Positions 4,832 to 56,189 of a stretch of 64,000 bases of DNA are shown here, in pieces. Made by a program: the position numbers and the translations under genes. The notes under the pieces are model-generated. The model was not told the origin of the DNA, made no database searches, and saw only the letters and a program-made list of their open reading frames with translations. This stretch comes from Bigelowiella natans CCMP2755 (Eukaryota; Protista; Cercozoa): positions 8,502-72,501 of the forward strand of contig ADNK01002630.1 of assembly GCA_000320545.1 (NCBI GenBank). Direction: 5' to 3'. Positions within the stretch are counted from its first letter, which is position 1; the number at the start of each line of letters is the position of its first letter.

Positions 4832-7800
4832 ATGGCCAAGAAGAAGAAGAAGAAAAGGCGATCGGACGCCGGCCGCTATGGAATTGAGGAGCACCGGCCA
4901 GGCAGTAGCCACAGCCGTGGTGGTGGGGGACGCGCTGGGCAACGCAAAAATGGTCCGAGCGAGGCCAAGGCTTTCAGATTTACAGTTGAGCGGGTTGTAA
5001 TGGATTCCTCCGGAACTGACGGGGGGAACTCCATGCTGATGAGCCACGAGGCCTTCAAAGCTCACGGCTTTCGGTTTGGGGGAAAGCTCGTGATTCTGGC
5101 GATCGTCGGTGACGGTGACAGCGGCGGCTCGAAGAAGCATTTCGTAGGAACAGTGTGCTGCTGGCCCGCGACTTGCGTTCGACAGCGTGCCATTCGCTTA
5201 CAGCTCTCTTCCATCTGGAGCTCGTTGTTGCAAGAAGGAAGAGAGGTAGAGGTGCGCCAATTGGGTTCATTGGTATCGACCCCATTGTCGGTTCCTGAGA
5301 CCGTGGCCATTCACTTGGTAAATAGTAGTGCGAACGATCGAGAGGGGAAAAACAATCGGCTGCGTGGTGGTAGCGCTGTTGCCTTTTCGCCTCACAAGTC
5401 TCAGGATAATCCTTCATATTTTTCTACTACTACTACGCCTACTAATACTACTACTACTACTGCTACACACAAACCGTCCTCTTCCTCCTCCTTCGTCATT
5501 TCAAAAGCGGTGCGTCAGTACCTCACAACTGCTTTCCGCGGGGAGGTCGTTGCGGAAGGTTGCACGTTGATGGCCAGCGTGGAAGGGCGGTCTAGATTCT
5601 TCCGCGTCGAGGAAATTTCGGCACGCTCTGTTCGCAATAGTACGCCCTCCAGCCCCAGGCAGACGACAAATGTTCCACCACGTCTCTTTAAGTTGGGCGG
5701 GGAAACGAGACTGGTGTTTCAGCGGGACGCGGCTAGAGATTCGTCACAGCCGCTTGCTGCTCTCCAGGGGAATAAAGAACGGAATAGCCTAGAGAAAGGG
5801 TCGGCTCCACCTATTGACAAAGGCAGCAGCGATGGTGATAGCTTGCACGGTGGTGATGGTGGCCAGATAGCGGCCACACGCTTTGTTGATATTGGTGGTT
5901 TGGGGAATGAGTTGAAGAGAATACGTCAAACAATCGAAGCTGGGTTAGGCTTGCTCCCCAAGCACATCTTCAACTCCTCCCAGGCGACCCCTTTGCGCCC
6001 GCCGAAAGGCCTTCTGCTATTCGGCCCTCCCGGCACGGGGAAAACCATGATTGCGAGGGCCGTGGCGAGTGAGTTTCGAGCTGCCTTTATCACGGTGAAT
6101 TCAGCAGAGATTCTCGGCCGATACGTCGGTGACGCGGAGGAGCGTCTTTCGCGAATATTCCAGGAAGCTGAGGAAAAGGCGCCCTCCATCATTTTCTTCG
6201 ATGAAATCGACGCGATATGCCCCAGCAGGGATTCCTCGTCGGGGGTCAACGAGCATACGCAGCGGCTCACTGCGACGCTGCTTACGCTGCTAGACGGCGC
6301 TAATATGCGCGAGGCGCGAGTTGTTGTCATTGCAGCTACCAATAAGCCGAACGACCTGGATGAAGCTCTGCGGAGACCAGGACGGATGGACCGGGAAGTT
6401 GCGGTAGGAATCCCAAACGAGGAAGGGCGCTTTGAGATCTTGACGAAGATGCTGCGCAGCATGCCGCATCGGCTTTCTGAGAGAGAGATTCGGCACTGCT
6501 GCTCGATTTCTCACGGGTACGTGGGTGCTGATCTTCGCTCTCTATGCCAGGAGGCGGCCTTTGCAACGCTAAATCAACTAAGGGAAAATAGGAGGAGGAG
6601 GAGGGGGAGGATGAGAGTGAGGGTAAAGAAGGAAGAACTTAGCATGAATCATCTTCCTCACGCCGCTGGCAAAGCTGTTGGTAGTACTACCCAATCTTCT
6701 TCGTTACTGAAAGGGAAAGTTTCGAGCAATGCGGAGGGGGGAGAGGAAGACTCGAGCTGCAACGAGGTGAGATATTTCGAATGTAATGACAGAGAAGTGT
6801 ATCATATACACGCACCTATGTTACCGTCAAAACAGAGCATCTTTTGCTTCTAGCATTTCTGTCTGCAAGCCTAACGATTGCCCTTGTTATGATGGGGCGC
6901 TTGGGCCCGGTCGATTTCGCAACACTTTCAAATTCTAACCTCTCTTTTCGTATATACTGCCGCAGCGTGGAGGCATCGTCAACGTGGAAAACGATGAACT
7001 GAAAGAAGCAGGAGGGGGGGGGGCAGCGGAAGAAGAGTCAATAACATTCGGCGACTTTCAACGTGCGTTCGCAACCGTTCAACCATCGGCCATGCGCGAG
7101 GTGAGCGTGGAGGTGCCTAAGGTCAGTTGGGAGGACGTTGGCGGTCAATGGCAAGTGAAGCAGCGCCTCAAAGAAGCTGTGGAATGGCCGCTGCGATATC
7201 CTCATAAGTTCAAGCGTATGGGAATCCGCCCGCCGCGCGGGGTGCTGCTCTATGGGCCTCCTGGCTGCAGCAAAACGCTGATGGCGAAGGCGCTCGCGCA
7301 CGAGAGCTCTCGCAACTTTCTCGCCGTGAAAGGCCCGGAGCTCTTCAGCATGTACGTCGGCGAGTCGGAGCGCGCGGTGAGAGACCTCTTCTCGAAGGCC
7401 CGGGCGGCATCTCCCTCCATCGTCTTCATGGACGAAGTGGACGCCCTGGCCGTGTCCCGGAGCGACGGCAGCGAGGGAAACAGAGCCCGCGACCGCGTTT
7501 TGGGACAGCTCCTCAGCGAGTTGGACGGGATGCAGCCGCTGGAGAACGTCGTGGTCATTGCGGCGACCAACCGGCCTGACCGGATAGACGCCGCGATGCT
7601 GAGGCCTGGGAGGATTGACCGCATGCTGTACGTGGGACTGCCCGATCGGAAGTCTCGAGAGGAGATAGCTGCGATTCAGTTGAAGGGCATGGCACACGAC
7701 AGCGGGAAAGTGAGTCCGTCATTGATCGCCGAGATGACAGAAGGATTCTCGGGCGCGGAGGTGTGCTCGTTGTGCAAGCAAGCAGCTGCCATAGCCCTCG

Positions 7801-9034: not shown

Positions 9035-12000
9035 CTACTGCAGATTGATTTTGAGCTCAGATTTGGCAGCCTCGATGACCTGCACAAGGTCGACAATGTA
9101 GCGGAGCGGCACTGCTTTGGGAAATCCCTTTTGGAACCAAGAGTAGGTCTTCAGCGCCTTGCCGTCCAGCTCCGCGTGCTCCATGAAGTCTGCCGCCGCC
9201 TTGGAGGGATCGTGGGTGCCCTCGACGAGAATCGTGGCGATGGTTGATTGCATCACTGCGAGCAGAGCTTCGAGGGTCGCATCGTCAGCAATCTCCTTGC
9301 AATCGAGAATGTCAGCTTTGATCCCCCGCGCGCGCTTCGCGTCGATGGGATGCTTGTAGGACATGTGCACGTCTTGGAACCTCGACTTGACGAGCACCGA
9401 CCGGAGCGTGGCCCAGAGCGAAGCCACGTGCTTCAGCCGCACCTGCTGCTCGATCGTCTTCGACTCCATTGCGCCGGCGGCGTCCTCCATCAGCAACGTC
9501 TCGCGCATGTACGTGGAGATGAGCACCTCGCCCAGATCGCCTGGGGAGGACACCTTGGACGACGATGACGATGCTGATGTCGTAGCGGTAGCTGTCACAA
9601 AGGCAATGACTGTTTCGAGGAGCTGCAGGCACTTTAGCGCCGCAGCGCCTGACCGAAGCTCGCCGAGAATGGAATCGCGCATGTCCGAGGTCAGCTCATC
9701 CTGAGGAACGCGCCGAGCAATGGCCGCCACATCAATCGCGTCAGCATCGTCGGCGTACTGCACCGCTAGCGAGCTGGTCTCATGCGCATCAACAAGCGGC
9801 TTGCCGATGAAGTAGGTGTCCATCAGGTACTGCTGCGCGTTGTCAAAGTTGTACACAGAGGCTCCCTCCGCGGTGTGATCGACGCACTGCTTCATCACGA
9901 ACGGGACGAACCGGCCCTCCAAATCGTACGAAATCGCCTGCGTCTGCGTGAGGAACCGAGGGCTGACAAACGACGCTGCCGCTGCGGCTGAAACCGCGCC
10001 CCCCTGCCCGGCAGACGAGGCGATGTGGAGAAGCTCCTGCCCCGTGTTCCGGAGGAAGACCGCGACGAGGGAGAGGAATTCGTTGTGTCTCTTCACAAGC
10101 TCCATAGTAATGGCCGCCGCACAGCGGCCTTCGTCGCGGTCTGACGCCAGCAGCAGCGTAATGGGAGACGCCTCTGAGACGGAGATGTCGCGGAACTTAT
10201 CAGGGATACGCTCGCCAACCTCCTCCCCCGCATCGGCAACGAAGTGCTTGATCCCTGGCCATGCAAGCTCCCAAGCCTTAGAGTAGCCCTGCAGCGCCTC
10301 GTAGCACGCACGCTTCTCTCCGCTGCCCTTCGCGTACGCTTCGATCGCGTCCTTGACGGTCAGCTTGCGCGCGGATTCCATATCCAAGGCGCGCGTGAGT
10401 CGCGGCACCAGCATCGTTTGGAACCGAAGAACATCGGGGAGGTAGCGAAGAGGGCGCAGCGACTCCTCGGCGGAGAGGAACCGAGAAAGCACCGGGAACT
10501 TCGCTGAGTCTCCGATGTCCCCACGCCTCTTCGCGAGCGCGGCCGTCGCCTCCTCGTCGCGGCCAAGTTGAGCGGCGAAGTGGCCGAGCGAGAACGCGTG
10601 CCGGTACCTCCATAGCTCAGGGGCGAGCAGCTTGCTCTCCTCCGCCGGCAGCGCCTTGGTGTCTAGGCGCTCATTGAGGTCGTCGGTGAAGAGTGTGAGC
10701 TGTGGGTTAGGGCTGGGCTTTGAGGCATCTCGCAGCTGCTTCAGCAGGATATCAATCTCCACTTTGCGCTGGCTGACAATGCTTTGCGCAACACCGGTTA
10801 CGGAGTCGATGACGATCTGGCGATGTCGCTCGGTCCCGAGGACCCCCCAGTCTTTCATCCACCGGCGTTGTGCTTCCAGCAAAAACCGCCTCTTCGTGTC
10901 ACCTGACTGCTTCATCTTCTCCTCTGCTACTTTGGCCAGCGCTACCTCCTCGTCAATGGCCTTGGGAGTCTTCGTGATAAACCTTTCGCCCTCCTTCCAT
11001 TGCGGCAATGCTTTGAGCTTCGCCATAGCCTCTCTAATAGTCTGTTTGTCGATGCTCCACCTGACGAACGAATGCAGCATGTACATAGTCGCGCCACCGA
11101 GTTCCCCCTTCTCGTTTTCCATTTTCTTGGGCGGCGGTATCGCATTCTTCACGAACTCGTGCGAGGCCAACACTGCCTGCAGGCCCTCCACGGTTTTCGG
11201 CCCGAGCTTTCCATCAACGTTTAACTTGGCTTCGGCGAATGCTTTGCCGGCGCCGGCGTGTCCAGGTTTGGGCAATCTATGGTTGACGAAAGTCTGCATC
11301 GCTTTGACGTCGGCCTCCTCCATCTCCGCAACCGTGAGGTCGGGCCGGTACCCCGTCGGAGCGAGAAAACGATCGGCACCGAGCACGAACTTGAATGCCC
11401 TGCACGCGGCGCCGGTTATCTTCTTCGAATCCACGCCTTCGCTCGGTTTAGGGCAATGGTACACCGGCTTGACGATGCGATTTCCGGGAGCGTTCTTCCA
11501 GACGTCGCCGTCATCGTATTGCACGGAATACGTTCCGTCGCCGTTGTTGCGGACGATTTTGCCCATAAAGACGCCATGCTCGTTCCTAAATTGAGCGCCA
11601 ACGCGTTCTCCAGCGGCAAACTTGGTCTTGATTCCTACCGGTTTTGGTTGATGTCAGTGCGAAGTCTGCTGCGGGGGGAATTGAGTAGCTTCGGAATAAA
11701 ACGCAGTGGGAGAATGAATCCTCAAAATGCCAGGAAAAATGATAGACAATTATAAACCAAAACCACAAAACAACGCCATACGGCCGAGCTCACCGTGAAT
11801 GCAAAATTCAAGAGAAGAAATCGAAAGCAAGAAAATAAGCGACGAAGACATCCTCGTCATCACTCTTTGATTCTCACAACTGCTCGATATCAAATCACAA
11901 AATACGCCGCGGACGTCGATCATCTTCTATCGCCAACGCTGCTAGAATTGACCTCCCGTCGTGGCAGCCCACATCATTCAAAATCGTCTTTCAGTGAGGA

Positions 12001-13819
12001 AAAATAAAAAGGAAATCCAACCTGTCAAATCGACTTTACTGGCCTTCGCCTTGGCGTCAGCTATAACATCCGCAAGGGTCGGCATTCCTCGCGTTTTCTT
12101 CTTGCTTTTCTTTCCTTCCCTGGCCTCTTGAACCCCTCCTTGTTTTGCCTCGCCGCTCCCAGCGCTCTCGAAACCTCCAACACCTCCGCCAACGAAACTA
12201 TTACCAAATCCACTACCACTTTTATCACCACTGCTCGCAAATGGGTTAGATCCGCCGCCACTCCCAAATCCGCCACTGCTGCTGCTGCTGGAACCAAACG
12301 GGAGCGAGGGGGCCTTAGCCATGTTCTCCTCTAGCATTGCCTTCAATATTTGATCCTCGTCAATCGGCTAATAAACAGTCGAGTCATCACCGGGCCAACG
12401 TGAACAGGGAAGCAGGCAGCAGCAAAATCGCGAAGATTTCAACAACTCATAAAATGTTTGGAAACGCGCGTGCGCGCGCACACTTGCACCCCCTCACATA
12501 CAGGGAGCGAGAGAGAGAGAGATAGGGAGAGAAAGAGAGAGAGAATTTGTGCATAGCACACAAACATGATGCAGAAACACGGCTGCTCGTCCTCGCAAGA
12601 CAAAAAAGAAAACCGACGCGGAAGGAAAGAACAAACCTGCTGCTTTAACGTGGCGGTTGTTGCCTTCAGTGCCTGGTTTGATATTATACATAACTCAGTG
12701 AGATTACATGCCATTCTAATCGAAACACGATCAATGGGAGCGAATATCGTTATTTGGTGGCTCTTGCGAGGAATAGGAGAGATTTTGTATTATGTAAGCA
12801 ACCTCCTTCTCTTCTTCCTCCTCCTCCTCCTCCTCCTCTTCCTCCTCCTCAGCTTCCTCTTTCTCCTTCGGGGGAGGCCCCGTATCGGCATTCTCGAAGC
12901 ACCAGTTGGCAGCTTGGCCGACGTCGCCATTGCAGGCCATCAGGCCGCGGACCGCGTGATGCTCCGCGATCCCCATCATCGTCAGCTGCGGAGCCATCGA
13001 CTTGTAGAGCTCTCTCTTGGCCTTCTCCTCGGCCCTCTTCTGCTTGGCCAACGCCCTCTGCCGCCTGGCCTCGAGACGCGCCCTGTGAAGCTGCTCGAGC
13101 TGTTGGCGGTACTTCTGCATTGCGCCGAGAGCGGCCTTTTCCTCCGGGGTCAGCCCTGCGTACGGATCGTTGTTATTCTGGAGGGAAGAAAGCTGCAGAT
13201 TCGAGGGGAGCTGTATCGTGCTCCCGGCCAATCGCGAGAGCACGCTTTGCGCGAGGAGCTCGGCGTCCTCGAGCGAGATCGCGAGACTCCTGGCCAGGTA
13301 CGAGAGGTCTGTTTCAATCAGGCCGAGCAGCTTTGCCTCGGGGTCAACAACCTGCGCGTTTGACGAGGAAAGCTCGCGGTTAGTAGGAAGTCGCTAGGAG
13401 GATCTAGTATCAATAGTCCGCTCGTCGATGACTGACGACTGCGGAGTGGTTTGTTTTGGCGACGGATTACCTTCTGCAATCCTACATCGCTCAAAATCTT
13501 GGTGGCAGCTGCCTTCCACGCCTTCGCATCCACGACCGCTGACGACGCGTAAAGAGTGGCGGAGCAGGACAACCTGTAGGGCACATCGATATTGCCCCGA
13601 CAATTAATGGGCTCTGTCAAGAATGATGATCTCTCGCAGCATCGGCGTGTGTCAAAGTGTTGTGTGATAAGAGAGGGCAGGGAAGAGGTCGGTCTACGAA
13701 GTGAATTCGAGCAATTTTGAGAATTCCCCACACCCTTTCGCTCCCTCTTTCTGCCGCTCTCCTCCTTATGCCGCACGCGAAGAAGCATATGCACGCGTAT
13801 ATATTTACATATATCTACA

Positions 13820-13861
<42 letters not shown>

Positions 13862-16394
13862 ATCTATATGTGTATAACATCAAACAAACATGTATTATAT
13901 GTTGCGATGCAGCAGTACCGCATCAGCGTCTCGACATTGGCGTTATAGTTCCCGCTTTGGCTGCGGAGGCCTCGTTGCGAATAGGCCCCTGCGCCAACAG
14001 AATTGCTGATAAACGTGAGGAAGAACGGCTTCTTAAGGGCCTTGGCCTGATTGAATTGCTCCGTCTGCCTTGTCCAGTCAAACAACTGGCCGTTCACACC
14101 GACGAGGATGAGGTTCGCCTGGATTTTGTGCTGCGCCTGAAGCTTGGGATCAACCTGGGGGATAGGTCGTTTTGTGGTTATGTTAATTACTAGTGCGTTT
14201 GAGATACGCCTGGTGTGCTCTTTTTGTGCATCTGGAAATGCGTGGGCGAGTGAGGATGGAGATGGAAGATCATGGAGAATGAAAAATGCCAAGCACGCTC
14301 AGCCTGGCACGGTACTTGTTCTATTAGTATTGTCACTATCCCCCCTCCCCCCCCAACCCCGCTCACTTCCTTCACGCGACTACTATAGCTATCACCTGCT
14401 CAATAACCCCTTTCCGATTAAACTGAATGCCGTATTTCTCCATCGAAGGAACTTTCAGATGAATTAGCCCTTTGCTGCGCGCGGCTAGGGCCGTCTCGAC
14501 GTCATCAAAGTGCGGCAGAGCAAGGTTTATATCTATCTCCTGGAACTGCTCGATATTCGAGCCGCATTCTGCTGGGTATCCGGTATAGATAAAAGCATTC
14601 ATATCTTCATAGCTATCACCTTCAAGTGCCACGCTCGAAACGGCCGTTTGCATCTGCTGCTCAGTTGTTGGGAAATCCGCTTGGAACTGCTGGGGGCCTT
14701 CCAACACCTGTCATGGCCAAAGACGGCGTGTGTGCGGAGGATGGGGGGGGGTGGGGGCGGTGGAAGGGACAGTCATGCACATCATCACGGTTCAGTATGG
14801 AATTTGAAATCACTCTCGAGGCACCGTTAATTTCTCCAATTCTCAAAAAACCGAATCAAATAGAAGCTACTTCAGTCACAGGATACTGCGACATCTTGTC
14901 TCCTCCTCCTCTCTTCGTCCTCCTCCTCCTCCTCCTCCTCCTCCCCCTTCTACGACTACTACTGCTACCACTACTACTACTACTAATACAAATGATTCTT
15001 CACCTTTGCTGGAAACCAATCAACGCAGCCGCTTTCGGCTTTATTCGCTACATAGCACCGCATTCCGCTCTGGGGAACGATGCCGTGGAACATCGGCAGC
15101 AAGTATTCCGGCACCGCCTCCGCTTCCTCCTCCCCATCCGCGTCGTCCTCTGCCTCCGGCGAGGAGAGGGGGGGGGGATATTGCAGCTTCCTCTCATCGA
15201 GCAGCTTCCTCTCGCCCTTCTCCTCATCCTTGCCATAGAATCTACACGTAATCTCGTATTTCCCCCCTTCTTTAGGACCCTCGACGGCCGTAACCTCTGC
15301 CTCATGGTAGATCCTGGGGTGCTGAGCTGTGGCGAGCTTCTTCGATTTGCAGAGAATCTTCTCGCCGATTAGCACTGGGGGAGGCTGCTTTTTCTTCGCC
15401 TCGACGGCCTTTCTTTCCGCTTCCATACGCACTTTCACTTCCAAGGGGGGAAACCTCTTGTAAAGAGCGGTTAGACCGGCTGCAACCTGTGGAGGTGGGT
15501 GGGGGGCAAAGGGGATAAGGATAATGATGTTACGAGGCGCGGCGAGGACAGCAGCAAGAGATCAGTCAGCATTTTGGCTAGAGAGGGCCCAGAGGAGCCC
15601 CACAATCAAACACAACTTTTGACACGCTCCCAACAATACACCACACACACGCACATACACGCACATACGCACGCGCACATGCACACGCGCACACGCAAAC
15701 CATGTAGCACCCGGTCGGTACATATAGCCTGTTTTTTACCTTCTTGAGGTCAAAGACAGCGGTCCGCACGAAGGAGAGGACTTCATCGCCTTTCGCTCCG
15801 ATGGCGACACCGGCCACTTTCGCAGTCAGACGCTTTGCCAGCATCTGAGCCATGCCGGGATTTTCGCGGAACGCCAGGTGCTCCCCAGCCTTGCTTCCTG
15901 ATGCAAACGCTGCGAAGAGTTCCTAAAGGGGGCGGAAATAGGCAAAGAGAAGGGGGGGGGGGGGGAAGGGGGCAGAGAACAAAGAAATGAGGGAAAACGC
16001 CGATCGAAAACAACGGTTATCATTGCGCCAGAAGTATTTCCCCCCGAGCTCTCCACCCCCCTGAATCTGATATCCTAATCCAAAGGAAATGCAATCCTAC
16101 CCTTTCTTGCTCGGAGAAGAACTGGAACTTCTTCTTGGGGTCCTCCACAACCATCGCAGTGAATTTCCGGGCGTTCTCCTTGGCGTAGTCCGGCAGCCGA
16201 GGCATCGATTTAATGAGGAAGCACTCCTGGAAAGCCGCGCATAACAACGCGAGCTTCAATGGGCGCAGATCTGGGGCGGGTGGATCCTTTTTCTCTTCAG
16301 CTTCCTTCTTTTTCTTCTCTTCCTCTAAAGCTGCGCCTCGAAGTTTTTGCTTCTCGGTGGAGAGCCTGAGAGGCAATATAAATACATATATATA

Positions 16395-17404: not shown

Positions 17405-20400
17405 ATATGGCGTTTTTTATTTATATTACCGATGATTTTGCTGTGTTTTTCTCCTGCTCGATTGCAAGTGCCGTTGCATTCTTAATCTCCCTCTCCACTG
17501 CTGCAATGACCCGGCCAAACCCTTCCTTGGCACGAGGGGCGAGGTCAGACACCAACGCGGCATGGATCGCCCGGAAAGTCGTCGAGTCTCTGAAAAGTTG
17601 AGAACAATTAGGAGGAAGAAGGACGAAGATAAGGGCGATTCAAACGGCAGCGAAGGCGATGTGGAATGCCAAGGAATCAAGCATGCCTGCCCATGTCGGG
17701 GCGACGACTCACCTGAATGGCACCAGCTCTGGCATCAAATCGTCGAAGGTAAACCGGACAAGGCCCTCGCTCTTTCTCGCCCACTCAACAAGCCACTTGG
17801 CGTCAGTGAGAGGGGCGGATCGAAGCGCAGTGTGAAGCAGCTTTTGCCCGGCGATCCGTGCGGTGGCGTCATCGTGGCCCTCTTCGGATGACAACTCGCT
17901 CGCGACGTTTTTCACGCATTTCAGCACGTACCTGTCGTAGGAGGCCGATACGCGAATACACACACACACACAAACAGAGAGATAGAGAAAGATAAAGAGA
18001 GAGTCCAATCACTTTCACAGAAACTCTATAGATCATTCAACGCAGAAGCACAATCACGACAACATCGACGAGCTAAGCAAATCGCACGTTCGCAGAGAAG
18101 GCGCCATGCCCGAGGCGCCGCATTGGCAGATGATCGAATCCAGCTGCTCCGATAGAGCGAGAAGGTCCGCAGGAATGCTTTCCTTATCAGCGCTGCCGAC
18201 ATGCGCGACAAGAGCGGATGCGAAGAACTTGACAATGTGCCGCAGCTTCGCAATAGCCAAAAGCACACTATCCGGCGACTTAAACTGCTTCTTCACGTCC
18301 AGAGAGAGCGCTCCGGCGATTTCTTTCGCGGACGTCTTCGCCAACGCGAGGGCCCCGGAGAGCGAGGAGGGAGGGGGCGCGCCAGCGACCTTTTTGACGT
18401 CCTCCGCCCCGCCTCCTTCCGCGAGCAGGCTCTCGTGCATGGAAGCAAAGTTGACCGAGAACAGGTTTCCGATGGCCTTGGCCTTCTTCACGGAGCCCTG
18501 GAGGCACTTTAAGATCTGCGCGCGCGCGGTCTTCCGAAAGGCGGGGTTGGCCAGCTCGTGGAGGGCCGTCAGGAGGCACACCCGCGCGGCGTGGCTTGAG
18601 ACGATATCGATGGAGGAGCGCTGAATGCGCTGCCCCGCCAGCGCCTTGAGGAAGTCGCGCAGGAGGTCCTTGTCCTTCATCATGACCCCGCCATCTCCCA
18701 AGCAAAGCTCGAAGATGTAGTACTCCATAAACCGCAGCGCCGAGTCTTTGAGCTGCTGCTCGGTCGCAACTGATTGCTGCCTCACCGTGAATTCCTGGTC
18801 CGGAACGAGCGTCTTGGAGCTCAGTTTTTCGCCGGTGACCGGCGAGATGTCGCTGTCCTTGAGGTAGTCCTCAATCGCCGTGCGCTCGTAAGTCTTCCCG
18901 TCTCCCTGAAGCACCACGGGCTCTTTGATTTCCTCCAGCGTAATCGGGCAGCGGAAATCGTACTCGACCAGTTTTCCCCGGAGCTTTGAGAACATGTCGA
19001 TGACCGCTTTGAGCGCCTTGGAGGTCCGCAATTCGCGGGTGGCCACGGTGGCCAGGGTCGCGAGCGTGTGCTTCGGCGCTACGCGCAACGGCACTGCCAC
19101 GTCGCGCAGGAACGTAAACATAAATGTGAGCTTTGTGAGCTTTTGGCGAACGGCGGCGGAGGCCTTCTGCGCCTGGTCTTTCTCCGCAGCTTCCAGCATC
19201 GCCGAGGCCGTCGTCTGCGCAGCCTTGAACATTCGAATCCATTGCCCGTACTGCGCGATCTCCGTCCAGTTTTTCCGGGACTCCGCCAGGGTATCGAGGG
19301 CGATGCTCAGCACCTATATGCGGCGATAATGTGGATTAGTTAGAAAACAGCCGAGCTGCCCAGGCTCGAGACGTACACGTTATTATTACACTGCGGCGAA
19401 GGGATAAACGCGACTAAGAAAACGAATAATCCAACGGCAACAACCATCATCAAAAACATGCATCTAAAAGCCAACACACGCAGTATTGTTATGAAACACA
19501 CCTCTAGGTCGAGAGCCGGGCCAGCCTGCTTTGCCTCGTCAATGTGCTTTAGAACGGCGGCCTTGCACAGAGGCACCGCGTTGATGAGCCCCATGTAAGA
19601 AACCACCATCGCCTCGCACCTCCAGAACAAAGCGTGGATCTCGGCGAACTTCGTCATGTTTTCGCCTCCGTTTTCCAGCCGCAATATCGTCCAGAGAAGC
19701 TGGGCTTGGTCTTCTCTACTGAGAGACTGGCTCGCGCGGCACCGCATGCATGCAAAGTCGTGCACATAGCGCCGAAGCAGCTTTTCCGGGATGCTGCCGT
19801 CCAGGCCTTGCTGGAACTGCATTCGCTTGACCTGGGCGTCGAGGGCTGCGACATCTTTCCCCTCGCCGGTCCGCGCCGTGGAGGCACGGAAGCTGTCAAT
19901 GGCGTTGTGCACAAAGAACGAGAATGGGAACTTCGACTCGAAGGAGGAGCCGAGCCCGTCCGAAGTTACTTCCACCTTTCCGCCCCGCGAGAGGGGCTGC
20001 TGCGCGCTAGAGGCAAATGCGTCCGCGAAGGATCGTCGGTAGAGGTAAAACCAGAGGCTCCGAACCTCTTCGTCGTTCAGAAGCTTGAGTCCATCGTTCC
20101 GGTCGGCGTGGGAGAGGAGTTGTGCAAACCCAGCCGCGAGAGTGTCGCGGATCTGCCGGTGCAATGCTGCCTGGAATGACCTCTCCACGGAGCCGCTCGT
20201 TGCAGCAGCCATCACATCGAGCTTCAGGTTGGACTGGGAGATTAGTCTCTTGACGGTATCCTCGAGCGCCGCTACCAGGTCGGTGTCATCTTGGAGAAGC
20301 TTCATCAGCATTCGTATTTGGCCTTGGACGTCAGTCACGGTGCGGGATTTTTGGTATGCCATGCGCCCCAGAGCGAGGCGGAAAGTGTTCAGAAGGGCGC

Positions 20401-40218: not shown

Positions 40219-41457
40219 CTAATTCGTCCTAGCTAGCAACCCCTCCATCCACGATTTCATCAAAACCTCATCATTGCCCACTGCTGAGCGTGCAATACAT
40301 GGTTCGTCTGAGCTCACGCGCTCATTGGGGGCGGAGTCGAAGGGAATATACTTCGTGGAATGGATGGAAACATCTCTCTACCCTAATAATACCTGGATAA
40401 GGAAGGTCGTATAGCTGAGCTCGGCCAGCACTCGCACCGTCTTCAAGGACCACGGTGTGGCGGGTGAAACACAGCAGCGGTGCGCAGACACGGTACAATC
40501 CAACATCAAATCAAACGCTCAAACGGTTTTTTTTTTTAATGGGGGGAAAAAATTTAAAAAAATAAAATCGTTAGTTTGCAGCCGCATGCACAAAAAAAAC
40601 AATCCGTTCTCCCAGGCCAGGCGCTCTCTCCGGAGCTATGCTTCGGAGCATGCACTCTTTCCCCCATCCGTTCACCCAAAAACACCAAAGCAAAAAACCA
40701 AAAGTAGGCAACAACACCTTTGAAGTCAAAATGGCCGTCATCGCCCTTTGGCCGGTGTTCTGCGGAGAGAGATCGCGCTGCTGGCCGACCCAAAACACAA
40801 TCGCTCGCGCAATTGCAAAGGAAAACAACGGGGGAACAAGCACCTTTGGGGAAGCGGGCGAGAGGGAGACGAAGAAACACAAATCAGAAAAGCACAAGAT
40901 GAGCGTCTCGCCTTTTACTCATATGATTTTCACATAGGATAATGCCACCTCCTCCTCCTCCTCCTCCTCCTCCTCAAACATCACGCAACGTCATTTAAGG
41001 TAGAAAGCTGTGTTGTCCTTCCATCGGCCATATTAGCGACGAGTATGTGTGAGCGCATTTGTGGAGGAAGAACAAGAAGGCGTAGAGAACAACGAAGAAG
41101 AAGAGGAAGAAGTAGAAGAAGAAACACAGGCTCGTTACTGGGGGAAACAATGTCAAGCTCGTTGACCTCAATTATCTTGGTGAGAAAAGGCTCATCCTCC
41201 TCTAACGCTTTCCCCCAAGGTTGGCCTAAGGACAGCATATATCACTGTATACTGACGTATTAATATATTTATAGTCATGGCTTATAATATCAGCTGCGCT
41301 TTATGCTTGCCTCTGCTCGGCGTCCAAGGCTGCAGTGCATACGTTCCAAGCACCACGAGCGCCGCAAACGCCAAACTCAACCTGTTTTATACGAAGCAGC
41401 AACAAAGTCGAGCGGCGTCAATGCGAGCTCACAATTACTAAATACGCGCTCACAAGC

Positions 41458-41494
<37 letters not shown>

Positions 41495-42165
41495 TATTTT
41501 ATATCCACTCTCCTCAGCAGCGTCAATGCATTTATGGCGAGTATGCCCTTGCTATCTACATGACAAAAACCGCATCTTTCATGCTGCGACATCGTTAGCA
41601 TACCGATGAAACATGATAGCGACCACGGTAGGATGAAAGCGGCTCTGCTGCTGCTGCTGCTGCTGCTGCTTGGTTACACGTGACTCCTTCTGCGAAGTAG
41701 ACGAGAGGTCTTGCAATGGCAGCTCGTGCTTCAAGACGTAATCCCCTCCTTCAATCGCCTAAGTGGGATCATGGGGGAGGAGATGAGGAATTGTCTATAT
41801 GAGTCTTGTCGGAGAGGGAAAAGGGGAGGTGACACACGATACATGCTTCCTAACGAGGCTCTCCCCCCGCCCCCCTTCTCCATAGCAGGTTCCAACCAAA
41901 AGCAAAGCTGCTATTTGGTTCCCCGCGGGGACGCGGCCCAACCCCCTCCGTGAGTAGGAGCAAAAACAAAAGGAGGAAATGGAAAGGAATAACCAAGCCG
42001 GCACTAATCAATCGACTCAGGACGAAGGCGCGTTGTAACTACCATGCAGGCCCATATGCCGGCTATGTAAGGGCTCAAGTGCGTGGCCAAGCTATTCGCG
42101 TACCAGATCGGCTTTTCGAGATAAAACGCACTGGGTAGACGAACACAAAATAATAATAACATCGG

Positions 42166-42209
<44 letters not shown>

Positions 42210-42975
42210 TGTGTGTGTGTGTGTGTGTGATGTTTATTTATATATTACATATAACAAACGAAGGAATTTCATTCTCCAACCACATCTCCAGGATGCACAT
42301 GCACAACACAAAACACACGCAGCCGAGTGGTAAAAGGCTGTTCTCCAGCAAGCAAATCAACTGGGTTTCCACACCTATACGCTCGAATCACGATGCCGAC
42401 GAAGAAGAAGATAACTAGACCTATATTTCAGCGCATTGGCCCACAACAAGCAACAACAACAGCATCACATGATCAAAATTGAGAAAGCTGTGGTCATTGA
42501 GAGAGAAAAGGATTTACTAACTAGACGGACAAAGGGGGTGCGTGCGCAGCACGCGAATACAAAACCGAAGGACACCCTAAAGACTCTACTCATTTCACCT
42601 CTCCCGTCATTGAGGAAAAACGCAAAAGCTGCAGCTTTGCCCCCGCGATCGATCCGCTGTCCGATCAAGTATCTGCGAAGAACCTGCAAGGAAAAACAGC
42701 TCACTACTACCATCCATCTCCTCGCTGTCTACTCGTTAGTGCACGTCGATCCAGCAAGCAATAGAGTGGAAATGAAATTGAGAAAAAAACCAAAAAAAGG
42801 GTACATGATATTGATATGTACATATTAGATGGCTCTGCGCATTATTGCAAGCTGCCTCCAAGCATTTTCTTTGAAAAGCGCTTATCTGCGGCGCTGGGTT
42901 TCTTACCGGTGTTACGAGGAGATGGAACTGCATATCGACGGCCCTGTTCGCACCATCAGCAGCCCGACAACAAAC

Positions 42976-43044
<69 letters not shown>

Positions 43045-43524
43045 CAAAAAATAATATCGTCTTGGCCTTTTTGCACAGATATTACTGAAAAATACTCATA
43101 CGCGCAGCTACATGCTGCAAATGCTCTTTCTAAGAATCCCCACAGGCAACCGCATCGATCGTATCGGCCAAGCATGCCAAGTGCTACATCGTCATGGTTT
43201 TCGAGGTAATTTCGCTCATCATCATCATCACGATCGTCATCATCATCATCATCACAATCGTCATCATCATCATCATCACCGTCGTCATCATTATCATCAT
43301 TATCATCATCGTCGTCGTCATTACGTTGTCCAAGAGAACATCAGGCTCGCTAGGCCGGCAGGATGCAAGTTTTGAATCATCCTGATGATGAAGAGGAAGT
43401 GGAGGGGGGGGGGGGGGGGGGGGGGGGGGTAAAAAAAACGAAAACAACGGGAATAAGACTGTCTACATCGCTTCGATTCTGCGCTCTCTTGCTTACTTTA
43501 TTCAAGATATACTGATCTCCACTT

Positions 43525-43565
<41 letters not shown>

Positions 43566-44997
43566 ACATAATATTAATACATATTATATCATCGTGTGTG
43601 CTTGAGTTATCAGCGGGCACTTTGCAATGTGAGAAGTGCCTCGCACACTACGCCTAATAGCTGTTTTTTTGCAGAGAAGCAAGCGTTCATCAGCGTTCAT
43701 TTCACTATAAATGTTGGTTAGTTTGCGGCTATATGAATTATCGTTACAGGAGGTGGTACGGCAAGGCCTTGAAGCAGCTCGAGCGCATATTGTATGGGTT
43801 CTATCGGAACCACAACATTTAATATGAGTCGGCGAGGCATCATAACGTTAAGGAAAACAATAGTTCCTGAAATATACTATTTGTATACGAAAATCCAATG
43901 AACTACCAATATCGCTTCAAGCGCAAAAGCAGCCATATGCGGGGGAAGGAGCCGCAAATAGCGTGAAACCAGCGACGTCCAATAGCCTCCATATCTACAC
44001 AACAGCAAAACATACACGCGGAAATTGAGCAGGATTCCTACCAGACCTGACCTCACCCGAAGAAGCTTGCCGAAAACGCGAACATTCATAAGCTATTGCC
44101 CTTAAAAGAACAAGACGAGACTATTTCGTCTCGGGCTGCTTGTTATATGATAGCTACAATGGAGCCGATTCTCAAGGGTGCTTACTTTCGGCGATAAACC
44201 GAGCGCGCGAATAAAAACCCCGACAGCACCTGATGCGAAGGACAACGCAGAGAGGGACAATGCGGTTGGTAATACGACCTAGGGAAAAAGAAACGAAGAG
44301 TTCGGCTTGCGTGTGAACTTACTTGGAAGATGTCAACTGCGCGCTCTCCTGATTGGGTATGAACAGAAATCCAGGATGAATTGGGGCTCTATACTCAGTG
44401 CGCGTGGCACACTTCGCAGAATGTTTACTGACCAAGTCGCAGGACTCTGATTAGCGGAGACTGGAAGAACGCTCGCTGGTAGGCGTCTTTACCTGTTGAT
44501 AATGAAGGCCGCCACTATGAGAAACACGTGTATTGAAAGGCAGTAGACTAATGAGAACGAGGGTGGTAAAATTGAGCGGGTGTTACCATACGGGAACTTA
44601 GAATCCATTGAATCGGGCGCTATTGTCATCGTCATCCAGTGGAAGAATAGCACCTGTTATTCGGTCATCATATAGCATATCGAAACTCGAGCCAAAAGAG
44701 CACTATCACTACCGTTAGCACTGCGACGACTCGAAGTCCATCAATGATTATGATCCTCTCCCTCACTTTCCCAGGCCACCGGCCACTACATGTCAGCCCG
44801 AAAAGCTCCCTGTGCGTAATTAGCGTCATCTTTAGAGAGACACTTCGGGGAAAAAGTCACGCGTCGTCTTCGTTGATAAGGTTATTCGACCTAATCACCG
44901 GCACTTTCTCAAGTATCGATGGCTTAGAGGGAAGGGGCGAGGCCCGTATTCGTGCGAATCTTGATGATCGGGCGGGGTTGTTTCCTCCATTGCTCAT
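40219..44997 (-). CDS. Intron-dense hypothetical protein (boundaries approximate)
   Basis: Repeated minus-strand ag/gt-bounded coding-like blocks (MSNGGNNPARSSRF.., GKDAYQRAFFQSPLIRVL, FYLEKPIWYANSLATHLSPY, LGQPWGKALEEDEPFLTKIIEVNELD) between microsatellite introns. No family recognised. Confidence 0.4.
43216..43322. repeat. Imperfect (ATC)n trinucleotide microsatellite, probably intronic
   Basis: catcatcatcacgatcgtcatcatcat... directly visible; followed by a poly-G tract at ~43404-43429. Confidence 0.85.
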
Positions 44998-45449
44998 TCT
45001 CCCGTGGTTATCCCCCCTCCGACCATCCTCTCTTCCTGGCCTGTAGAACTGATCAACGATGATCAGCCTTTCAGCTCCTACGATGTCTCCAAACATAACA
45101 AAAATATATTTTTTACAGGTGAAAATGCTCCGAAGTCAACAACTTTCTCATTAGACGACAATAAAACGCCCTATTTCTCACAGTGAGCAATTCAAGCAGA
45201 CCAGGGACTAAGGAGCTTACTTCTTCTGCGAATTGCGGATTGAATCATGGATTGATTTAATGTCGCCCATGTCAAACCGTATGTATTATCCAAATTTTAT
45301 AAAATACTCCAGAATCAATTGTCTCTATAATTAATTTACATGACAATTTGTATTTTAATTTCATCTTTATTCTTATCGAGAGAACTTCGTAAATATTTTG
45401 CCAGATTAATAATTCTTTCTGCCACGTAACCTCTGAAGCGATACCCCCC

Positions 45450-46624
45450 CCTCGTCAGCTTCACGGCGACTGCAGCAGAAGGACAAAGCACTCGGAAGTC
45501 ATTTGCTTCGATGTAAGTGCAATTAATGAATCATATCATCTCGTGTAACGGGAAAGTGAGTAGGCTGAAAAGTGGATATAAAGCTTTGTTTTCGGATGAA
45601 AGTCTCATATTAACGCCACTGTGCTCTCCCCTTTCCTCTTCACTGCTGCCACTAGGAGCTTCAGTTTCTCACATGAGGATGATGCGGTAGAGGATGCTAA
45701 ATGATTGAATTCATTGATTGTTTTTAGAGGGCGAAATCGCCGTCGGTAGCAATATCTGAATCTCATGAATACACCGCCCCCCCCCCCCCCTTTCCAGATC
45801 ACCGAGAACGCTCCTGGGAACCCAACGATTGTTATAAAGGTTGGGAATTACGCTTATTTTCTGCATCCTACAGATATATTTCTTTGTTGACTTGTATCGT
45901 TTGAATAGATTTTGAAAGATTCGTTTCTTTCGAGCATGTTTACGAATTGCCATCTCTAACACGTATTCTCTGAGTCCCCCGCCTCCTAAAAATTAGCAGC
46001 CCACTTTGACTCTCCGACGATTGGTATTATTAGGTTGGAACCTCCAGTCTCGTCGATGCGAATACTGGGCTCCCAGCTCTTTCGAAGATCGCTTGTTTGA
46101 TAGAGGTTGTTTTTGTTACTCAAGATATTCTTAACCCCCCCTTCCGATGAAGGCCTTAGTTATACAACTAGTAGGTCACAAGAGTTTCTCGCAATTATTG
46201 GATTTTAAATGGCAAAAACAAGACTTTGACATTTAAAATTCACCATTTTCGCTTCTATTCCTCCCCCCCCCCCCCCATTTACCCCTGTGTATAGAACGTG
46301 TGCATCCTCAAACGTCAAAAGCTCAACGTCGTTTTGGTACTATGGATCAAATTCTTCTTGATTCACATCATAAATCGAATAGCTGATACAAATAGTCCAA
46401 TCTTAGTAGCTATCCGAGAGGAAGCAAAGGATTTTTGGGGGTTACTTGCAAGCACTCGCAGTTGCATTAGATAGGCCCTTCTGATGATTTGAAAGGTATC
46501 TTCTGGAGCTGTAGGGTTCGGGTGTTTAGCTCTCAATCTAAAGGTCTTTCTTTGCGAGATGCGTATTAGCACATGATTCTGACAATCGTAGTCACGCGTA
46601 CTAACATACACGCGCTCGCATTCG

Positions 46625-46661
<37 letters not shown>

Positions 46662-46894
46662 TCACACACATACATATTAGAAGAGTTATACGTACTGTAT
46701 ATGCTGTTTTGGTTGTGAATTAGGAACGACCTTCCGGCGTGATGATGAAACAGGTGTGTGAGAGTGGATTTGGATAAAAAATAAGCATTTCTACGGCGAA
46801 ATGCCCTCTTCAAGCGACTGTAACCGATTTTAGCTGCTCCTCCAATAGTTATTGTAGTAGAATTATGCTACATTGAGAGCCTTTTCCGTCTGGG

Positions 46895-46948
<54 letters not shown>

Positions 46949-47949
46949 TTGCGTGTATGCGTGTTTAAACGTATATGGTTAATGGTTGACACGCACAGGC
47001 ATTAGCGGCGACGGGGCAGGCAAAGCTGATGGAACTCTATGGAAGAATGTTCAATGTAAAATGAATAAACTACTAACTGGAATTTAGAGACTTCTGCAGT
47101 CTGTTTAAGCGTGTCGCAGCTCGATGCAACCACCGAAGGCCGCGCCGCGAGCCCTTCCCCGTTGATTTATTAAACTACGGGTGCCTTTCAAACACAGTCA
47201 CTTGGGGAGTCGTGCGCGCAAGTGCTGCTTACATATGAGAACCTTGGTATTTATCTTCTTTTTCAATGTTGTTGTGGGTGAATGCTACTACTACTAGTTG
47301 TTAGGTGTTTTACGCTTATGTGTATGTGTGTGGGGGGGGGGGGGGGAGGGTGGGGGGGAGGAAGACTCAAACTAACACACGTGCAAAATAATTTCTATCA
47401 CAGCACTTTAAATGACATTAAGGCTTCATTCAGCCGTGACTTTGAATCAGCACAGTGCCTCCTATTGACAGAGGAGGCATTTGGAGGCTTATGTAGTAGT
47501 ATCGTGGGAATCTGCGCGTGTTCATTTGCGGCGTGCCGTGCTGATCAACCATAAATTCCCACTCAGGAAATCGAAGTCAGCACAAGAATGCAATAAACAC
47601 ATTTGAAGGTAGTTTCATCGGGCAAAACCAGTCACGATGATGATGACGCCGGCAGCGACGATTATTGAGTCGGTGTGGAGATGAGAGAACCCCCCGCCTT
47701 TATTTGTGCTTTCTCTCAGCGTTATTCAAGCTAGGTGTGGTTCCCATTGTTAACGAAAACGACACGGTGAAAGCTGCGATGATATTTTATGGCGCTGCTA
47801 CTATAAATATATTGTGCATCTTATCGTAATCTATCCTTCGCTGTGTTCTCTACGATCTCGACGTGATAGTTTGCCTCGTGCAGCTAAGCGTTAGAAAGAG
47901 GAAATATGATGCTTTCAGTAGGGAGTATATAATACATATCGTATAGCAC

Positions 47950-48002
<53 letters not shown>

Positions 48003-48654
48003 GAAGTGCGGGCAGAACTAACGTTTGAACTTGCAAATGTACCTTCCCACAGGTTGCAGTCGAGGAGCTGAGATTCGGTGAAATTGCAGTTAGCTATAGT
48101 ACGGCGGTGCTGCTAGGTGTTGCGTGGTTCAATTAAACGGCATTACTATTTTGAAATGTAATATGTTCATATTGAAATATATGATGCATTATATGATATA
48201 CGAAGGTGATAACGATTGCCTCTCCGCAATGGTAGCGTCGATGCTAAAGGCGAAGTAAGAACACCTCCAATTGTTGTTTCCGTCACGCCAACGCCGTGAG
48301 TCATAACCCGCATCTTCCTATCGCAGGCACCTGATAATCCTCACTGATGTCGACGGCTTGTACACATCAAATCCCACGAAAGATCCGGTTTGGCAGCTGT
48401 AGCATCGTTTGTGTGTTTTCGAGAGAGAGAGAATAAGATCGCATTGTCTCCATGAACACACCATTAATTCTTCTTGTCTTTGCTGTGTATTGTTGTTGTG
48501 GTTGTTGTTGTTTTGTTGTTGGCCGTGGTGGCGGTGGTGCTGCAGGAGGCAAAACGGATAGAAGTCGTTGAAGATATAGAGTCGCTAAACGTCGATGTTT
48601 CGGTATTATTATTAATAGACAAACGATAATATGCAGATGCCCGCATTCTTATGA

Positions 48655-48698
<44 letters not shown>

Positions 48699-49961: not shown

Positions 49962-49994
<33 letters not shown>

Positions 49995-50141
49995 ATTTTG
50001 ATTCTTATTGCTTTTTGATGAAATCTGCTGATTGTATATGCTTTCCTATTCAGGTGCTGAAAGGTGATAAAGTCGGGACGTTGTTTAAAGTAGGCCATGA
50101 TAGTAACACTAGATACGTGAAGATATTACATAATATACGTG

Positions 50142-50183
<42 letters not shown>

Positions 50184-51199: not shown

Positions 51200-51238
<39 letters not shown>

Positions 51239-51536
51239 GTCATCAATTGATATCCGAATATTTCAAAAAATGGATTCTTGGATTAGACAAAGTTACCGAT
51301 TTAGATACCAATGCCTCGAAGCATCTGTTTTTGAGCAGTACTCACCTTTGGGCTATTCTTCTCGTTTTCCGGTCGTTCGTTTATCGTAGGAAATGTATTT
51401 GCGCAAGGATTGGTCAATTACTCAAGGTAACGACAGATATGAAACTACAACTTAAATAGTCAAGGAACTTTTGTCAGACGTATATTAGCACCTCTCTATT
51501 CATGGAGCAGAACTCCACGTATCCTATGTTTAAATC

Positions 51537-51576
<40 letters not shown>

Positions 51577-51960: not shown

Positions 51961-51996
<36 letters not shown>

Positions 51997-54011: not shown

Positions 54012-54052
<41 letters not shown>

Positions 54053-54550: not shown

Positions 54551-54582
<32 letters not shown>

Positions 54583-54598
54583 CTATACATGTTATAAC

Positions 54599-54640
<42 letters not shown>

Positions 54641-55232: not shown

Positions 55233-55268
<36 letters not shown>

Positions 55269-56153: not shown

Positions 56154-56189
<36 letters not shown>

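What the first reader, a model, noticed from the sequence alone, without database searches (positions are those of the whole stretch)
14500..14700. Apparently zinc-less RZ finger that keeps the ECG cysteine
At the position where RNF213 has its RZ finger (upstream of RGL...LMRL and DLxxLAxxL motifs, both seen here), the sequence reads FPTTEQQM...FIYTGYPAECGSNIEQ...LPHF. This parallels RNF213 MPED...HPCSVGECGRPMEQ...H. The Cys of ECG (codon ~14564-14566), the transthiolation nucleophile in RNF213, is retained with a downstream His (~14510-14512), but the CxxxH/CxxC zinc ligands are absent. This could be a zinc-independent transthiolating E3 active site or a decayed remnant.
Basis: partly seen in the sequence, partly recalled or inferred. 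Interest (0 to 1): 0.82.

Follow-up and report, generated by a model that had tools for sequence, protein, structure and literature searches.

The report
Decayed RZ finger relic, not active
In a giant RNF213-like ubiquitin ligase gene of a microbial eukaryote, the place where relatives carry their catalytic zinc finger (the RZ finger) holds only a degenerate leftover. Its single cysteine is missing from the two closest relatives, so it is most likely a dead relic, not a new zinc-free active site.

Summary
Exon 14707-14396 (minus strand, 104 aa) is spliced and expressed. It carries one Cys (TGC, 14564-14566) in an ECG motif and a His at 14510-14512.

A profile built from 27 RZ-bearing homologues places the RZ site between the E3-shell helices and the helix that follows RZ. 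That bracket is the Tudor exon, this exon and a PDZ exon. Within it, the only local match to the RZ-region profile is this stretch, with the Cys on the nucleophile column. The match is weak: about 0.006-0.009 of shuffles reach it, hhalign gives E 0.34, and Pfam PF20173 gives no hit.

- All four zinc ligands and the CxxCGxxIGGxxH half are gone.
- The only two relatives that cover this stretch (L001, L012) have Leu and Glu at the Cys position and no RZ finger.
- AlphaFold2 gives no confident fold, and Foldseek finds nothing RZ-like.
- The same genome keeps a paralogue with an intact RZ finger.
- A tree of the C-terminal domain puts the RZ-less clade inside RZ-bearing lineages.

Verdict: a decayed RZ relic that now serves as a linker between an inserted Tudor domain and an inserted PDZ domain. 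Ligase activity probably runs through the U-box. A zinc-free catalytic Cys is not excluded, but I put it near 5%.

The scan had already noted this stretch (s1-728097) and the paralogue (s1-715875).

The parts
14396..14707 (-). Exon of interest: 104 codons, phase 0, VLEG...VIEQ. It holds the RZ relic and then the first strands of a PDZ domain.
   Evidence: RNA contigs of X15, X18 and X19 carry 14394-14704 and join it to 15001 and 14152. GT..AG boundaries were fixed. The joined frame has no stops.
14618..14674 (-). FPTTEQQ...VALEG. Probable relic of the LPxMPED motif and of the short helix that precedes the RZ finger. In ZNFX1 that helix binds ubiquitin.
   Evidence: HMMER with the RZ-region profile and hhalign both place it on 'LPxMPED..MA..L.GG'. 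Each match is weak on its own (E 0.16 and E 0.34).
14546..14617 (-). DSYED...YPAECGSNIEQ. Probable relic of the first half of the RZ finger. Both ligand columns are substituted: the first Cys column by Asp and the His column by Phe in the HMMER alignment, or by Asn and Tyr if the stretch is laid on RZ without gaps.
   Evidence: alignment (HMM positions 4-43 against model residues 567-609). Shuffle test.
14564..14566 (-). TGC, the only Cys of the exon. It sits on the nucleophile column in the HMMER alignment.
   Evidence: L001 has Leu and L012 has Glu at the aligned position.
14510..14512 (-). CAC, a His 18 residues after the Cys. In RZ the general base is 21 residues after the nucleophile, directly after IGGxx.
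   Evidence: RZ spacing from PMC11549300. No IGG motif here. L001 keeps the His but L012 does not.
14396..14470 (-). N-terminal part of an inserted PDZ domain: GLIHLKV..GIQF, where GIQF is the carboxylate-binding loop.
   Evidence: The orthologue segment folds as a PDZ, and all top Foldseek hits are PDZ domains. P0151, the L012 protein, carries PF17820.
13999..14154 (-). The rest of the PDZ domain, in the next exon.
   Evidence: Exon confirmed by RNA contigs.
13919..13998 (-). Linker ending in RGL...ETLMR. It leads into the helix that follows RZ in homologues.
   Evidence: domain 3 starts at TLMR.
13471..13573 (-). Exon coding LSCSATLYASS..., the counterpart of the conserved 'R.LLH..L..G' helix that follows RZ.
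   Evidence: domain 3 (HMM 402-532 against model 735-865). Exon confirmed.
12803..13351 (-). Exon with the 'DLSYLARSL...ELLAQSVLSRL' helix, the counterpart of 'DW..L..LL....D...LLH..L', followed by a UBA domain.
   Evidence: for the helix. for UBA_7 (E 2.8e-7). for the intron inside the GAG repeat.
15004..15486 (-). Inserted Tudor-like exon directly upstream. It starts with YKRFPPLEV, a second candidate for the LPxMPED motif.
   Evidence: L012 has CEFPREV at the same spot. The Tudor assignment is by eye and by similarity to L001 and L012, not by Pfam.
15740..15922 (-). Last E3-shell exon before the bracket.
   Evidence: domain 2 (HMM 172-300 against model 273-396, 42.6 bits).
18789..18956 (-). 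U-box, in the place of the RNF213 RING. It is the likely working E3 domain of this protein.
   Evidence: Pfam U-box E 1.4e-10. PDB U-box matches, E 2e-8.

Best explanation
The stretch is the decayed leftover of an RZ finger in a duplicated RNF213-like gene. The ancestor had a U-box and an RZ finger, as the paralogue on contig C3250 of the same genome still has. In the lineage leading to this gene, the zinc-binding beta-sandwich was lost: all four ligands and the CxxCGxxIGGxxH half are gone. Tudor and PDZ domains were inserted on either side of the site. What remains is about 45 residues of acidic sequence with no confidently predicted fold. It keeps a faint imprint of the pre-RZ helix and of the first hairpin, including one Cys. 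It most likely works as a flexible tether between the Tudor and PDZ modules and has no thioester chemistry. Ubiquitin transfer by this protein is inferred to go directly from an E2 held by the U-box. The WWE, Tudor, PDZ and UBA modules are inferred to select targets. Shown here: the exon, its expression, its position, the loss of the ligands, the non-conservation of the Cys, the intact paralogue, and the derived position of the RZ-less clade. Inferred: descent of these particular residues from RZ, the tether role, and catalysis by the U-box.
For: Position: the flank profile aligns the model on both sides and leaves the RZ nodes unmatched, which brackets the site to the Tudor exon, this exon and the PDZ exon. 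Imprint: the only local hit of the RZ-region profile in 1948 residues is this stretch, with the Cys on the nucleophile column, and 19-27 of 3000 shuffles of the bracket reach that score. hhalign picks the same register for the helix. Decay: the exon has one Cys and two His. The ten columns C,H,C,G,C,C,I,G,G,H are invariant in 22 RZ-bearing homologues. PF20173 scores 63-72 bits on homologues and gives no hit here or in L001 at E<=10. No constraint on the Cys: L001 reads PDALTA and L012 reads DDSEEL where this gene reads PAECGS. Neither relative has an RZ finger. No fold: pLDDT is below 50 over residues 1-48 here and over the relic in L001, and Foldseek finds no match. Derived loss: the clade of this gene, L001, P0003 and L012 has SH-aLRT 100. 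It is sister to the RZ-bearing paralogue (89) and nested among RZ-bearing rows. One PF20173 match in the whole genome lies in that paralogue. Literature: zinc-ligand mutants kill RZ activity, and C. elegans ZNFX1 lacks RZ yet keeps its U-box-like Miz domain.
Against: The residue-level homology is statistically weak: HMMER E 0.16 over the C-terminal model, hhalign probability 0.2%, BLASTP nothing. A second FPP-type motif at the start of the Tudor exon could be the true counterpart of LPxMPED instead. Only two relatives cover this stretch, and both are distant (about 40-60% identity in the C-terminal domain). Loss of the Cys in them therefore does not prove that it is unused here. The structure models are shallow (3-4 rows) and of low confidence. 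U-box activity was not tested.
Confidence: 0.6

Rival explanations
1. An unrelated linker. The RZ finger was deleted outright when the Tudor and PDZ modules were inserted, and the resemblance (FPT..E, ECG...E) is chance in an acidic linker. The stretch is still non-catalytic.
For: No significant pairwise or profile-profile match. PF20173 is silent. L001 and L012 show no RZ-like residues at all here. L012 has a different module order (PDZ, Tudor, PDZ), which shows that the region has been rebuilt repeatedly. A competing FPP/FPR motif lies directly after the E3 shell.
Against: HMMER's single best local alignment falls exactly inside the bracket that was defined beforehand and puts the Cys on the nucleophile column. 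About 0.006-0.009 of shuffles reach its score. Two methods choose the same register for the helix.
Confidence: 0.28
2. A zinc-independent active site. The relic loop keeps a reactive Cys (with His66 or another base) that accepts ubiquitin from an E2 docked on the U-box and passes it on. That would be an RBR-like relay without a zinc scaffold.
For: The Cys lies on the nucleophile column of the best alignment and is followed by Gly, as in every RZ finger. A His lies 18 residues downstream and is shared with L001. The gene is intact and expressed. ZNFX1 shows that a U-box-like domain and an RZ Cys can work as a relay.
Against: The Cys is absent from both clade relatives. All four ligands, the IGG motif and the correctly spaced His are missing. 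Zinc-ligand mutants of RNF213 and ZNFX1 are inactive even with the Cys present. There is no confident fold.
Confidence: 0.05
3. The conserved part of the stretch (A-F/Y-I-Y/H..Y/H-P ... EID..AL..H.DD...AR) is an N-terminal extension of the PDZ domain, or a short linear motif for a partner. It would be kept for that reason and not as an RZ leftover.
For: This gene and L001 share 38-39% identity over the exon, including these positions, and the shared motif runs straight into the first PDZ strand. AlphaFold2 puts helices just before the PDZ in L001.
Against: pLDDT is below 50 for most of it. L012 shares almost none of it (15% identity). This rival is compatible with the best explanation, because a relic can be reused.
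Confidence: 0.07

Closest known systems
RZ finger of RNF213 and ZNFX1 (Pfam PF20173, ZnF_RZ-type)
   Same: The stretch lies at the same place in the protein, between the E3 shell and the helix that precedes the C-terminal domain. It carries a faint imprint of the preceding helix and a Cys-Gly on the nucleophile column.
   Different: None of the four zinc ligands is present. There is no CxxCGxxIGGxxH half, no correctly spaced general-base His, no PF20173 score and no predicted beta-sandwich. The Cys is not conserved in the two closest relatives.
RNF213-like paralogue of the same genome (G000 contig C3250, minus strand, about 56.6-40.5 kb; loci L003-L005)
   Same: AAA modules, a U-box in place of the RING, the E3 shell and the C-terminal domain. 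It is the sister of this gene's clade in the tree.
   Different: The paralogue has a canonical RZ finger (71.9 bits). At that site it lacks the WWE domain, the PDZ domain, the Tudor exon at the RZ site, the UBA domain and the low-complexity insertions.
C. elegans ZNFX1, which lacks the RZ domain but keeps a U-box-like Miz domain (bioRxiv 10.1101/2025.10.14.682297)
   Same: A member of an RZ-bearing ligase family that lost RZ while keeping a RING/U-box-type E2-binding domain.
   Different: It belongs to a different family (an SF1 helicase, not a dynein-like AAA ligase). The preprint says it lacks the RZ domain entirely and mentions no leftover. I know of no report of domains inserted at the site.
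Clade relatives L001 (JGI 3300017015 transcript contig) and L012/P0151 (ENA ERZ23491500 scaffold)
   Same: L012/P0151 shows the same architecture in full: AAA, U-box, WWE, Tudor, PDZ, UBA and the C-terminal domain. L001, a contig that covers only the Tudor-to-C-terminal part, shows the same order over that part. Both lack RZ, and the PDZ lies directly before the post-RZ helix.
   Different: Neither has a Cys at the aligned position. L001 has a long extra insert and L012 has a second PDZ. Neither has the FPT..E motif.

Membership tests
RZ finger (PF20173) | First zinc ligand, a Cys four residues before the His (human C4505) | tested here: not met
   Asn without gaps, Asp in the HMMER alignment. 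The column is invariant Cys in 22 homologues.
RZ finger (PF20173) | Second zinc ligand, a His seven residues before the nucleophile (human H4509) | tested here: not met
   Tyr without gaps, Phe in the HMMER alignment. H4509A is inactive in RNF213.
RZ finger (PF20173) | Third and fourth zinc ligands, CxxC nine and twelve residues after the nucleophile (human C4525, C4528) | tested here: not met
   The exon has no second Cys.
RZ finger (PF20173) | Nucleophile Cys followed by Gly (human C4516) | tested here: inconclusive
   Cys-Gly is present and lies on that column in a weak alignment. It is replaced by Leu in L001 and Glu in L012.
RZ finger (PF20173) | General-base His directly after IGGxx, 21 residues after the nucleophile (human H4537) | tested here: not met
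   No IGG motif. The His is at +18, in LPHF.
RZ finger (PF20173) | Profile score at or above the Pfam gathering threshold (27 bits) | tested here: not met
   No hit at E<=10. Controls P0052 and P0032 score 62.9 and 72.3 bits.
RZ finger (PF20173) | Zinc-stabilised beta-sandwich fold | tested here: inconclusive
   AlphaFold2 mean pLDDT 47. Foldseek finds nothing at E<=0.001 and no RNF213 or ZNFX1 chain among the rows shown. A low-confidence model cannot decide this.
RZ finger (PF20173) | Position between the E3-shell C-lobe and the helix leading to the C-terminal domain | tested here: met
   Bracketed by profile domains 2 and 3.
RNF213-like AAA E3 ligases (whole gene) | Dynein-like AAA modules, an E3 module and the RNF213-type C-terminal domain | tested here: met
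   AAA_5, AAA and AAA_7. U-box. The C-terminal domain matches human RNF213 chains, E 2.9e-8. 727 family hits.
RNF213-like AAA E3 ligases (whole gene) | RING finger in the E3 module | tested here: not met
   A U-box occupies the place, as in the paralogue and in P0052.
PDZ domain (the neighbour of the relic) | PDZ fold with a carboxylate-binding loop | tested here: met
   The L001 segment has pLDDT 64-79 and its top PDB matches are all PDZ domains, TM by target up to 0.72. P0151 has PF17820. The loop reads GIQF here. The Pfam PDZ models did not hit the split exons.

The most novel reading that the evidence does not exclude
The relic is a working zinc-free catalytic loop. An E2~Ub held by the U-box hands ubiquitin to Cys48 of this exon on a flexible tether, which then delivers it to targets held by the neighbouring Tudor, PDZ and WWE modules. 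That would be an RBR-like relay that no longer needs the RZ zinc scaffold. It would have arisen or survived only in this species' lineage.
Probability: 0.04. Interest if true: 0.85.

Novelty: new variant of a known kind. Interest (0 to 1): 0.3.

Why it matters
RNF213 and ZNFX1 are the only known RZ-finger ligases, and how work is divided between their RING/U-box-type domain and the RZ finger is still debated. This genome offers a natural comparison inside one cell. One RNF213-like gene has a U-box plus an intact RZ finger. A sister gene has a decayed RZ and has gained reader modules (WWE, Tudor, PDZ, UBA) at that very site. That makes a direct question testable: can the dynein-like ligase chassis work on the U-box alone? 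The case is also a caution for annotation, because a surviving Cys-Gly at the right place is not an active site once the zinc scaffold is gone.

Tried and rejected
- PDB sequence search with the exon found nothing at E<=10.
- BLASTP of the exon against the paralogue's RZ-bearing block gave only noise.
- Pfam on the exon and on the L001 segment gave no RZ and no PDZ hit.
- The representative search used the last exon. Many of its top hits were Tudor-repeat proteins that matched only the first 55 residues, so I sorted them out by hand.
With a C-terminal-domain alignment it returned only distant members at 32-35% identity, L006-L011, which I did not pursue.
- Two word searches with L001 segments found nothing. 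One with L012 found only its own protein.
- P0003 and P0011 have no contig on record.
- My first spliced model had stops. The cause was an unnoticed intron inside the GAG repeat and a 36-nt exon.
- I considered that the exon might be an unexpressed pseudo-exon. I rejected this because three studies' transcript contigs include it.
- I considered that the RZ finger might lie elsewhere in the gene, for example near YHCPKPSEG in the last exon. I rejected this because the genome-wide PF20173 scan finds no second match and the flank profile places the site upstream.
- The joined protein was built only inside local scripts, for frame checks and for alignment to my own profiles. It was never sent to a search or folding tool.

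Full report
**What is there.** The window carries a very large intron-containing gene on the minus strand, from about 32136 to 9038.
- Pfam finds dynein-type AAA modules in the two largest exons.
- It finds a U-box in exon 19313-18057, a WWE domain in exon 17136-16787 and a UBA domain in exon 13351-12803. It also gives a weak, sub-threshold Tudor match (16.7 bits, cut-off 27.2) at the start of the last exon.
- The last exon matches the C-terminal domain of human RNF213 chains in the PDB (E 2.9e-8).
- The U-box matches solved U-boxes.

So this is an RNF213-like ligase in which a U-box stands where RNF213 has its RING.

**The exon.** The exon named in the finding is real and expressed. Contigs of three runs from three studies hold about 60% of the sampled words of an 8.4-kb genomic stretch, and they skip introns with GT..AG ends. 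After adjusting the junctions, the exon is 14707-14396: 312 nt, phase 0, 104 residues. The next exons on either side are 15486-15004 and 14154-13919. Two further details were needed to obtain a stop-free frame: an intron inside the GAG repeat (12802-12673) and a 36-nt exon (12672-12637). One transcript contig is 16.7 kb long, so the protein has well over 5000 residues.

FPTTEQQM is at 14651-14674, the Cys codon TGC at 14564-14566 and the His codon CAC at 14510-14512. The exon contains one Cys and two His in total.

**What defines an RZ finger.** According to PMC11549300, human RNF213 binds a metal with C4505, H4509, C4525 and C4528. C4516 is the nucleophile and H4537 the general base. H4509A and C4516S are both inactive. 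For ZNFX1, bioRxiv 10.1101/2025.10.14.682297 reports three things:
- The isolated RZ domain needs both the zinc ligand H1853 and the Cys C1860.
- A short helix before the finger binds ubiquitin.
- C. elegans ZNFX1 lacks RZ but keeps a U-box-like Miz domain.

Among homologues fetched here, 22 aligned RZ segments have ten invariant columns: C, H, C, G, C, C, I, G, G, H.

**Is the exon at the RZ position?** A search of 1.84 billion representatives with the last exon gave 727 hits. Most long family members carry a canonical RZ finger 200-400 residues before the C-terminal domain.

I built a profile from 27 of them, covering RZ with about 330 residues before it and 260 after. I aligned it to a locally joined model of the C-terminal 1948 residues:
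- Profile nodes 89-300 align to the E3-shell exons (28.8 and 42.6 bits).
- Nodes 402-532 align to TLMR|LSCSATLYASS... and to the DLSYLARSL...ELLAQSVLSRL helix (11.4 bits, i-E 5e-6).
- Nodes 494-604 align further down in the last exon.
- Nodes 300-402 find no partner. These cover the LPxMPED motif, the RZ finger and its linker.

The RZ site is therefore bracketed to model residues 397-734. That is the Tudor-like exon, the exon of interest and the PDZ exon.

**Is the stretch itself derived from RZ?** A sub-profile of 116 nodes, running from LPxMPED to the post-RZ helix, has a single local hit in the whole model. It covers residues 567-609, from FPTTEQQ to AECGSNIEQ, against nodes 4-43, with the Cys on the nucleophile column.
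- The score is weak: -1.5 bits, E 0.16.
- On the bracket alone it is 1.6-2.4 bits, and 19-27 of 3000 shuffles reach that.
- hhalign between the clade alignment and the RZ alignment picks the same register, but only for the helix and not significantly (E 0.34).
- BLASTP against the paralogue sees nothing.
- PF20173 scores 62.9 and 72.3 bits on two homologues and gives no hit here at E<=10.
- A second FPP-type motif at the start of the Tudor exon, shared with L012, competes for the LPxMPED position.

I read this as suggestive evidence for a true relic. It is not proof.

**Conservation.** Only two relatives cover the stretch.
- L001 is a 6.1-kb transcript-like contig whose 1989-residue open frame has the same order of modules.
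- L012 is a 30-kb metagenomic scaffold with an intronless gene. Its full product, P0151, has precomputed Pfam hits to AAA, U-box, WWE, PDZ_6, UBA and MIB_HERC2, but none to RZ.

Where this gene reads PAECGS, L001 reads PDALTA and L012 reads DDSEEL. Neither relative has an RZ finger anywhere in the sequence available. So the Cys is unique to this gene among its known kin.

**Structure.**
- AlphaFold2 on the exon with a three-row alignment gives mean pLDDT 47, below 50 for residues 1-48. Foldseek then finds nothing at E<=0.001 and no RNF213 or ZNFX1 chain among the rows shown. This is inconclusive, but it gives no support for an RZ fold.
- The L001 segment folds with pLDDT 64-79 from just after the relic onward, and its PDB matches are PDZ domains.

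The relic therefore lies directly before an inserted PDZ domain. The first strands of that domain, including the GIQF loop, are in the same exon.

**History.** The whole genome (91.4 Mb, 3736 contigs) has one PF20173 match over the cut-off, on contig C3250. It belongs to a second RNF213-like gene with AAA modules, a U-box and an intact RZ finger.

In a tree of the C-terminal domain (52 rows, quick IQ-TREE; P0002 and P0004 were left out as duplicates of L001 and L012):
- This gene, L001, P0003 and L012 form one clade (SH-aLRT 100).
- That clade is sister to the paralogue (89).
- It is nested within RZ-bearing rows (98).

Loss of RZ is therefore derived. The root is a midpoint root only, but RZ occurs on both sides of it.

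I did not test that.

**Mechanism, as I judge it.** The stretch is a decayed RZ relic that now serves as a flexible, acidic tether between the inserted Tudor and PDZ modules. Ligase activity is inferred to come from the U-box by direct E2-to-substrate transfer, by analogy with C. elegans ZNFX1. The added reader modules are inferred to choose targets.

I give about 0.6 to descent from RZ with no catalysis and about 0.28 to an unrelated linker. A zinc-free active Cys gets about 0.05, and reuse as a PDZ extension or linear motif about 0.07.

**Limits.**
- The joined protein was used only in local scripts. All database searches and folds were done exon by exon or on natural contiguous sequences of relatives, and a search or fold with the joined protein was left out.
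- Reads were laid on 6000 bases only.

Noticed in passing
window 14396-14470 and 13999-14154 (-): A divergent PDZ domain is inserted directly after the RZ relic and is split by an intron. Pfam misses it in the exon pieces and in L001. The orthologue's model matches solved PDZ domains, and the L012 protein carries PF17820.
   Followed up: yes
G000 contig C3250, about 40545-56667 (-); loci L003-L005: A second RNF213-like gene in the same genome has a U-box and an intact RZ finger (PF20173, 71.9 bits). It is the sister of the window gene's clade.
   Followed up: partly
window 12637-12672 and 12673-12802 (-): A 36-nt micro-exon follows an intron whose donor lies at the end of a GAG (poly-Glu) repeat. 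Transcript contigs break at the repeat, so this junction rests on one loose end per run.
   Followed up: partly
window 11607-12050: Low-depth contigs (depth 7-33, against 146-467 for the spliced form) run unspliced through the intron 11635-12021. This suggests some intron retention or pre-mRNA.
   Followed up: no
window 11470-11634 (-), start of the last exon: This Tudor-like unit matches very large proteins made of 10-34 similar repeats, for example P0005 to P0010 (up to 7637 residues), at 36-41% identity. These crowded the top of the representative search.
   Followed up: no
P0011 (1216 aa): This protein carries the RNF213-type C-terminal domain behind a P-loop GTPase-like N-terminus and a Gly/Ala-rich spacer, with no E3 module or RZ finger. 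It is either a different architecture or a gene-model artefact, and no contig is on record.
   Followed up: no
window 14340-14375 and 14735-14775: The introns on both sides of the exon hold long G-runs (below the exon) and C-runs (above it) on the coding strand.
   Followed up: no
L012 nt 6200-7500: The metagenomic relative has two PDZ domains around the Tudor module, plus MIB_HERC2 repeats and two UBA domains. The site between the E3 shell and the C-terminal domain therefore appears to be a hotspot for domain insertion in this clade.
   Followed up: partly
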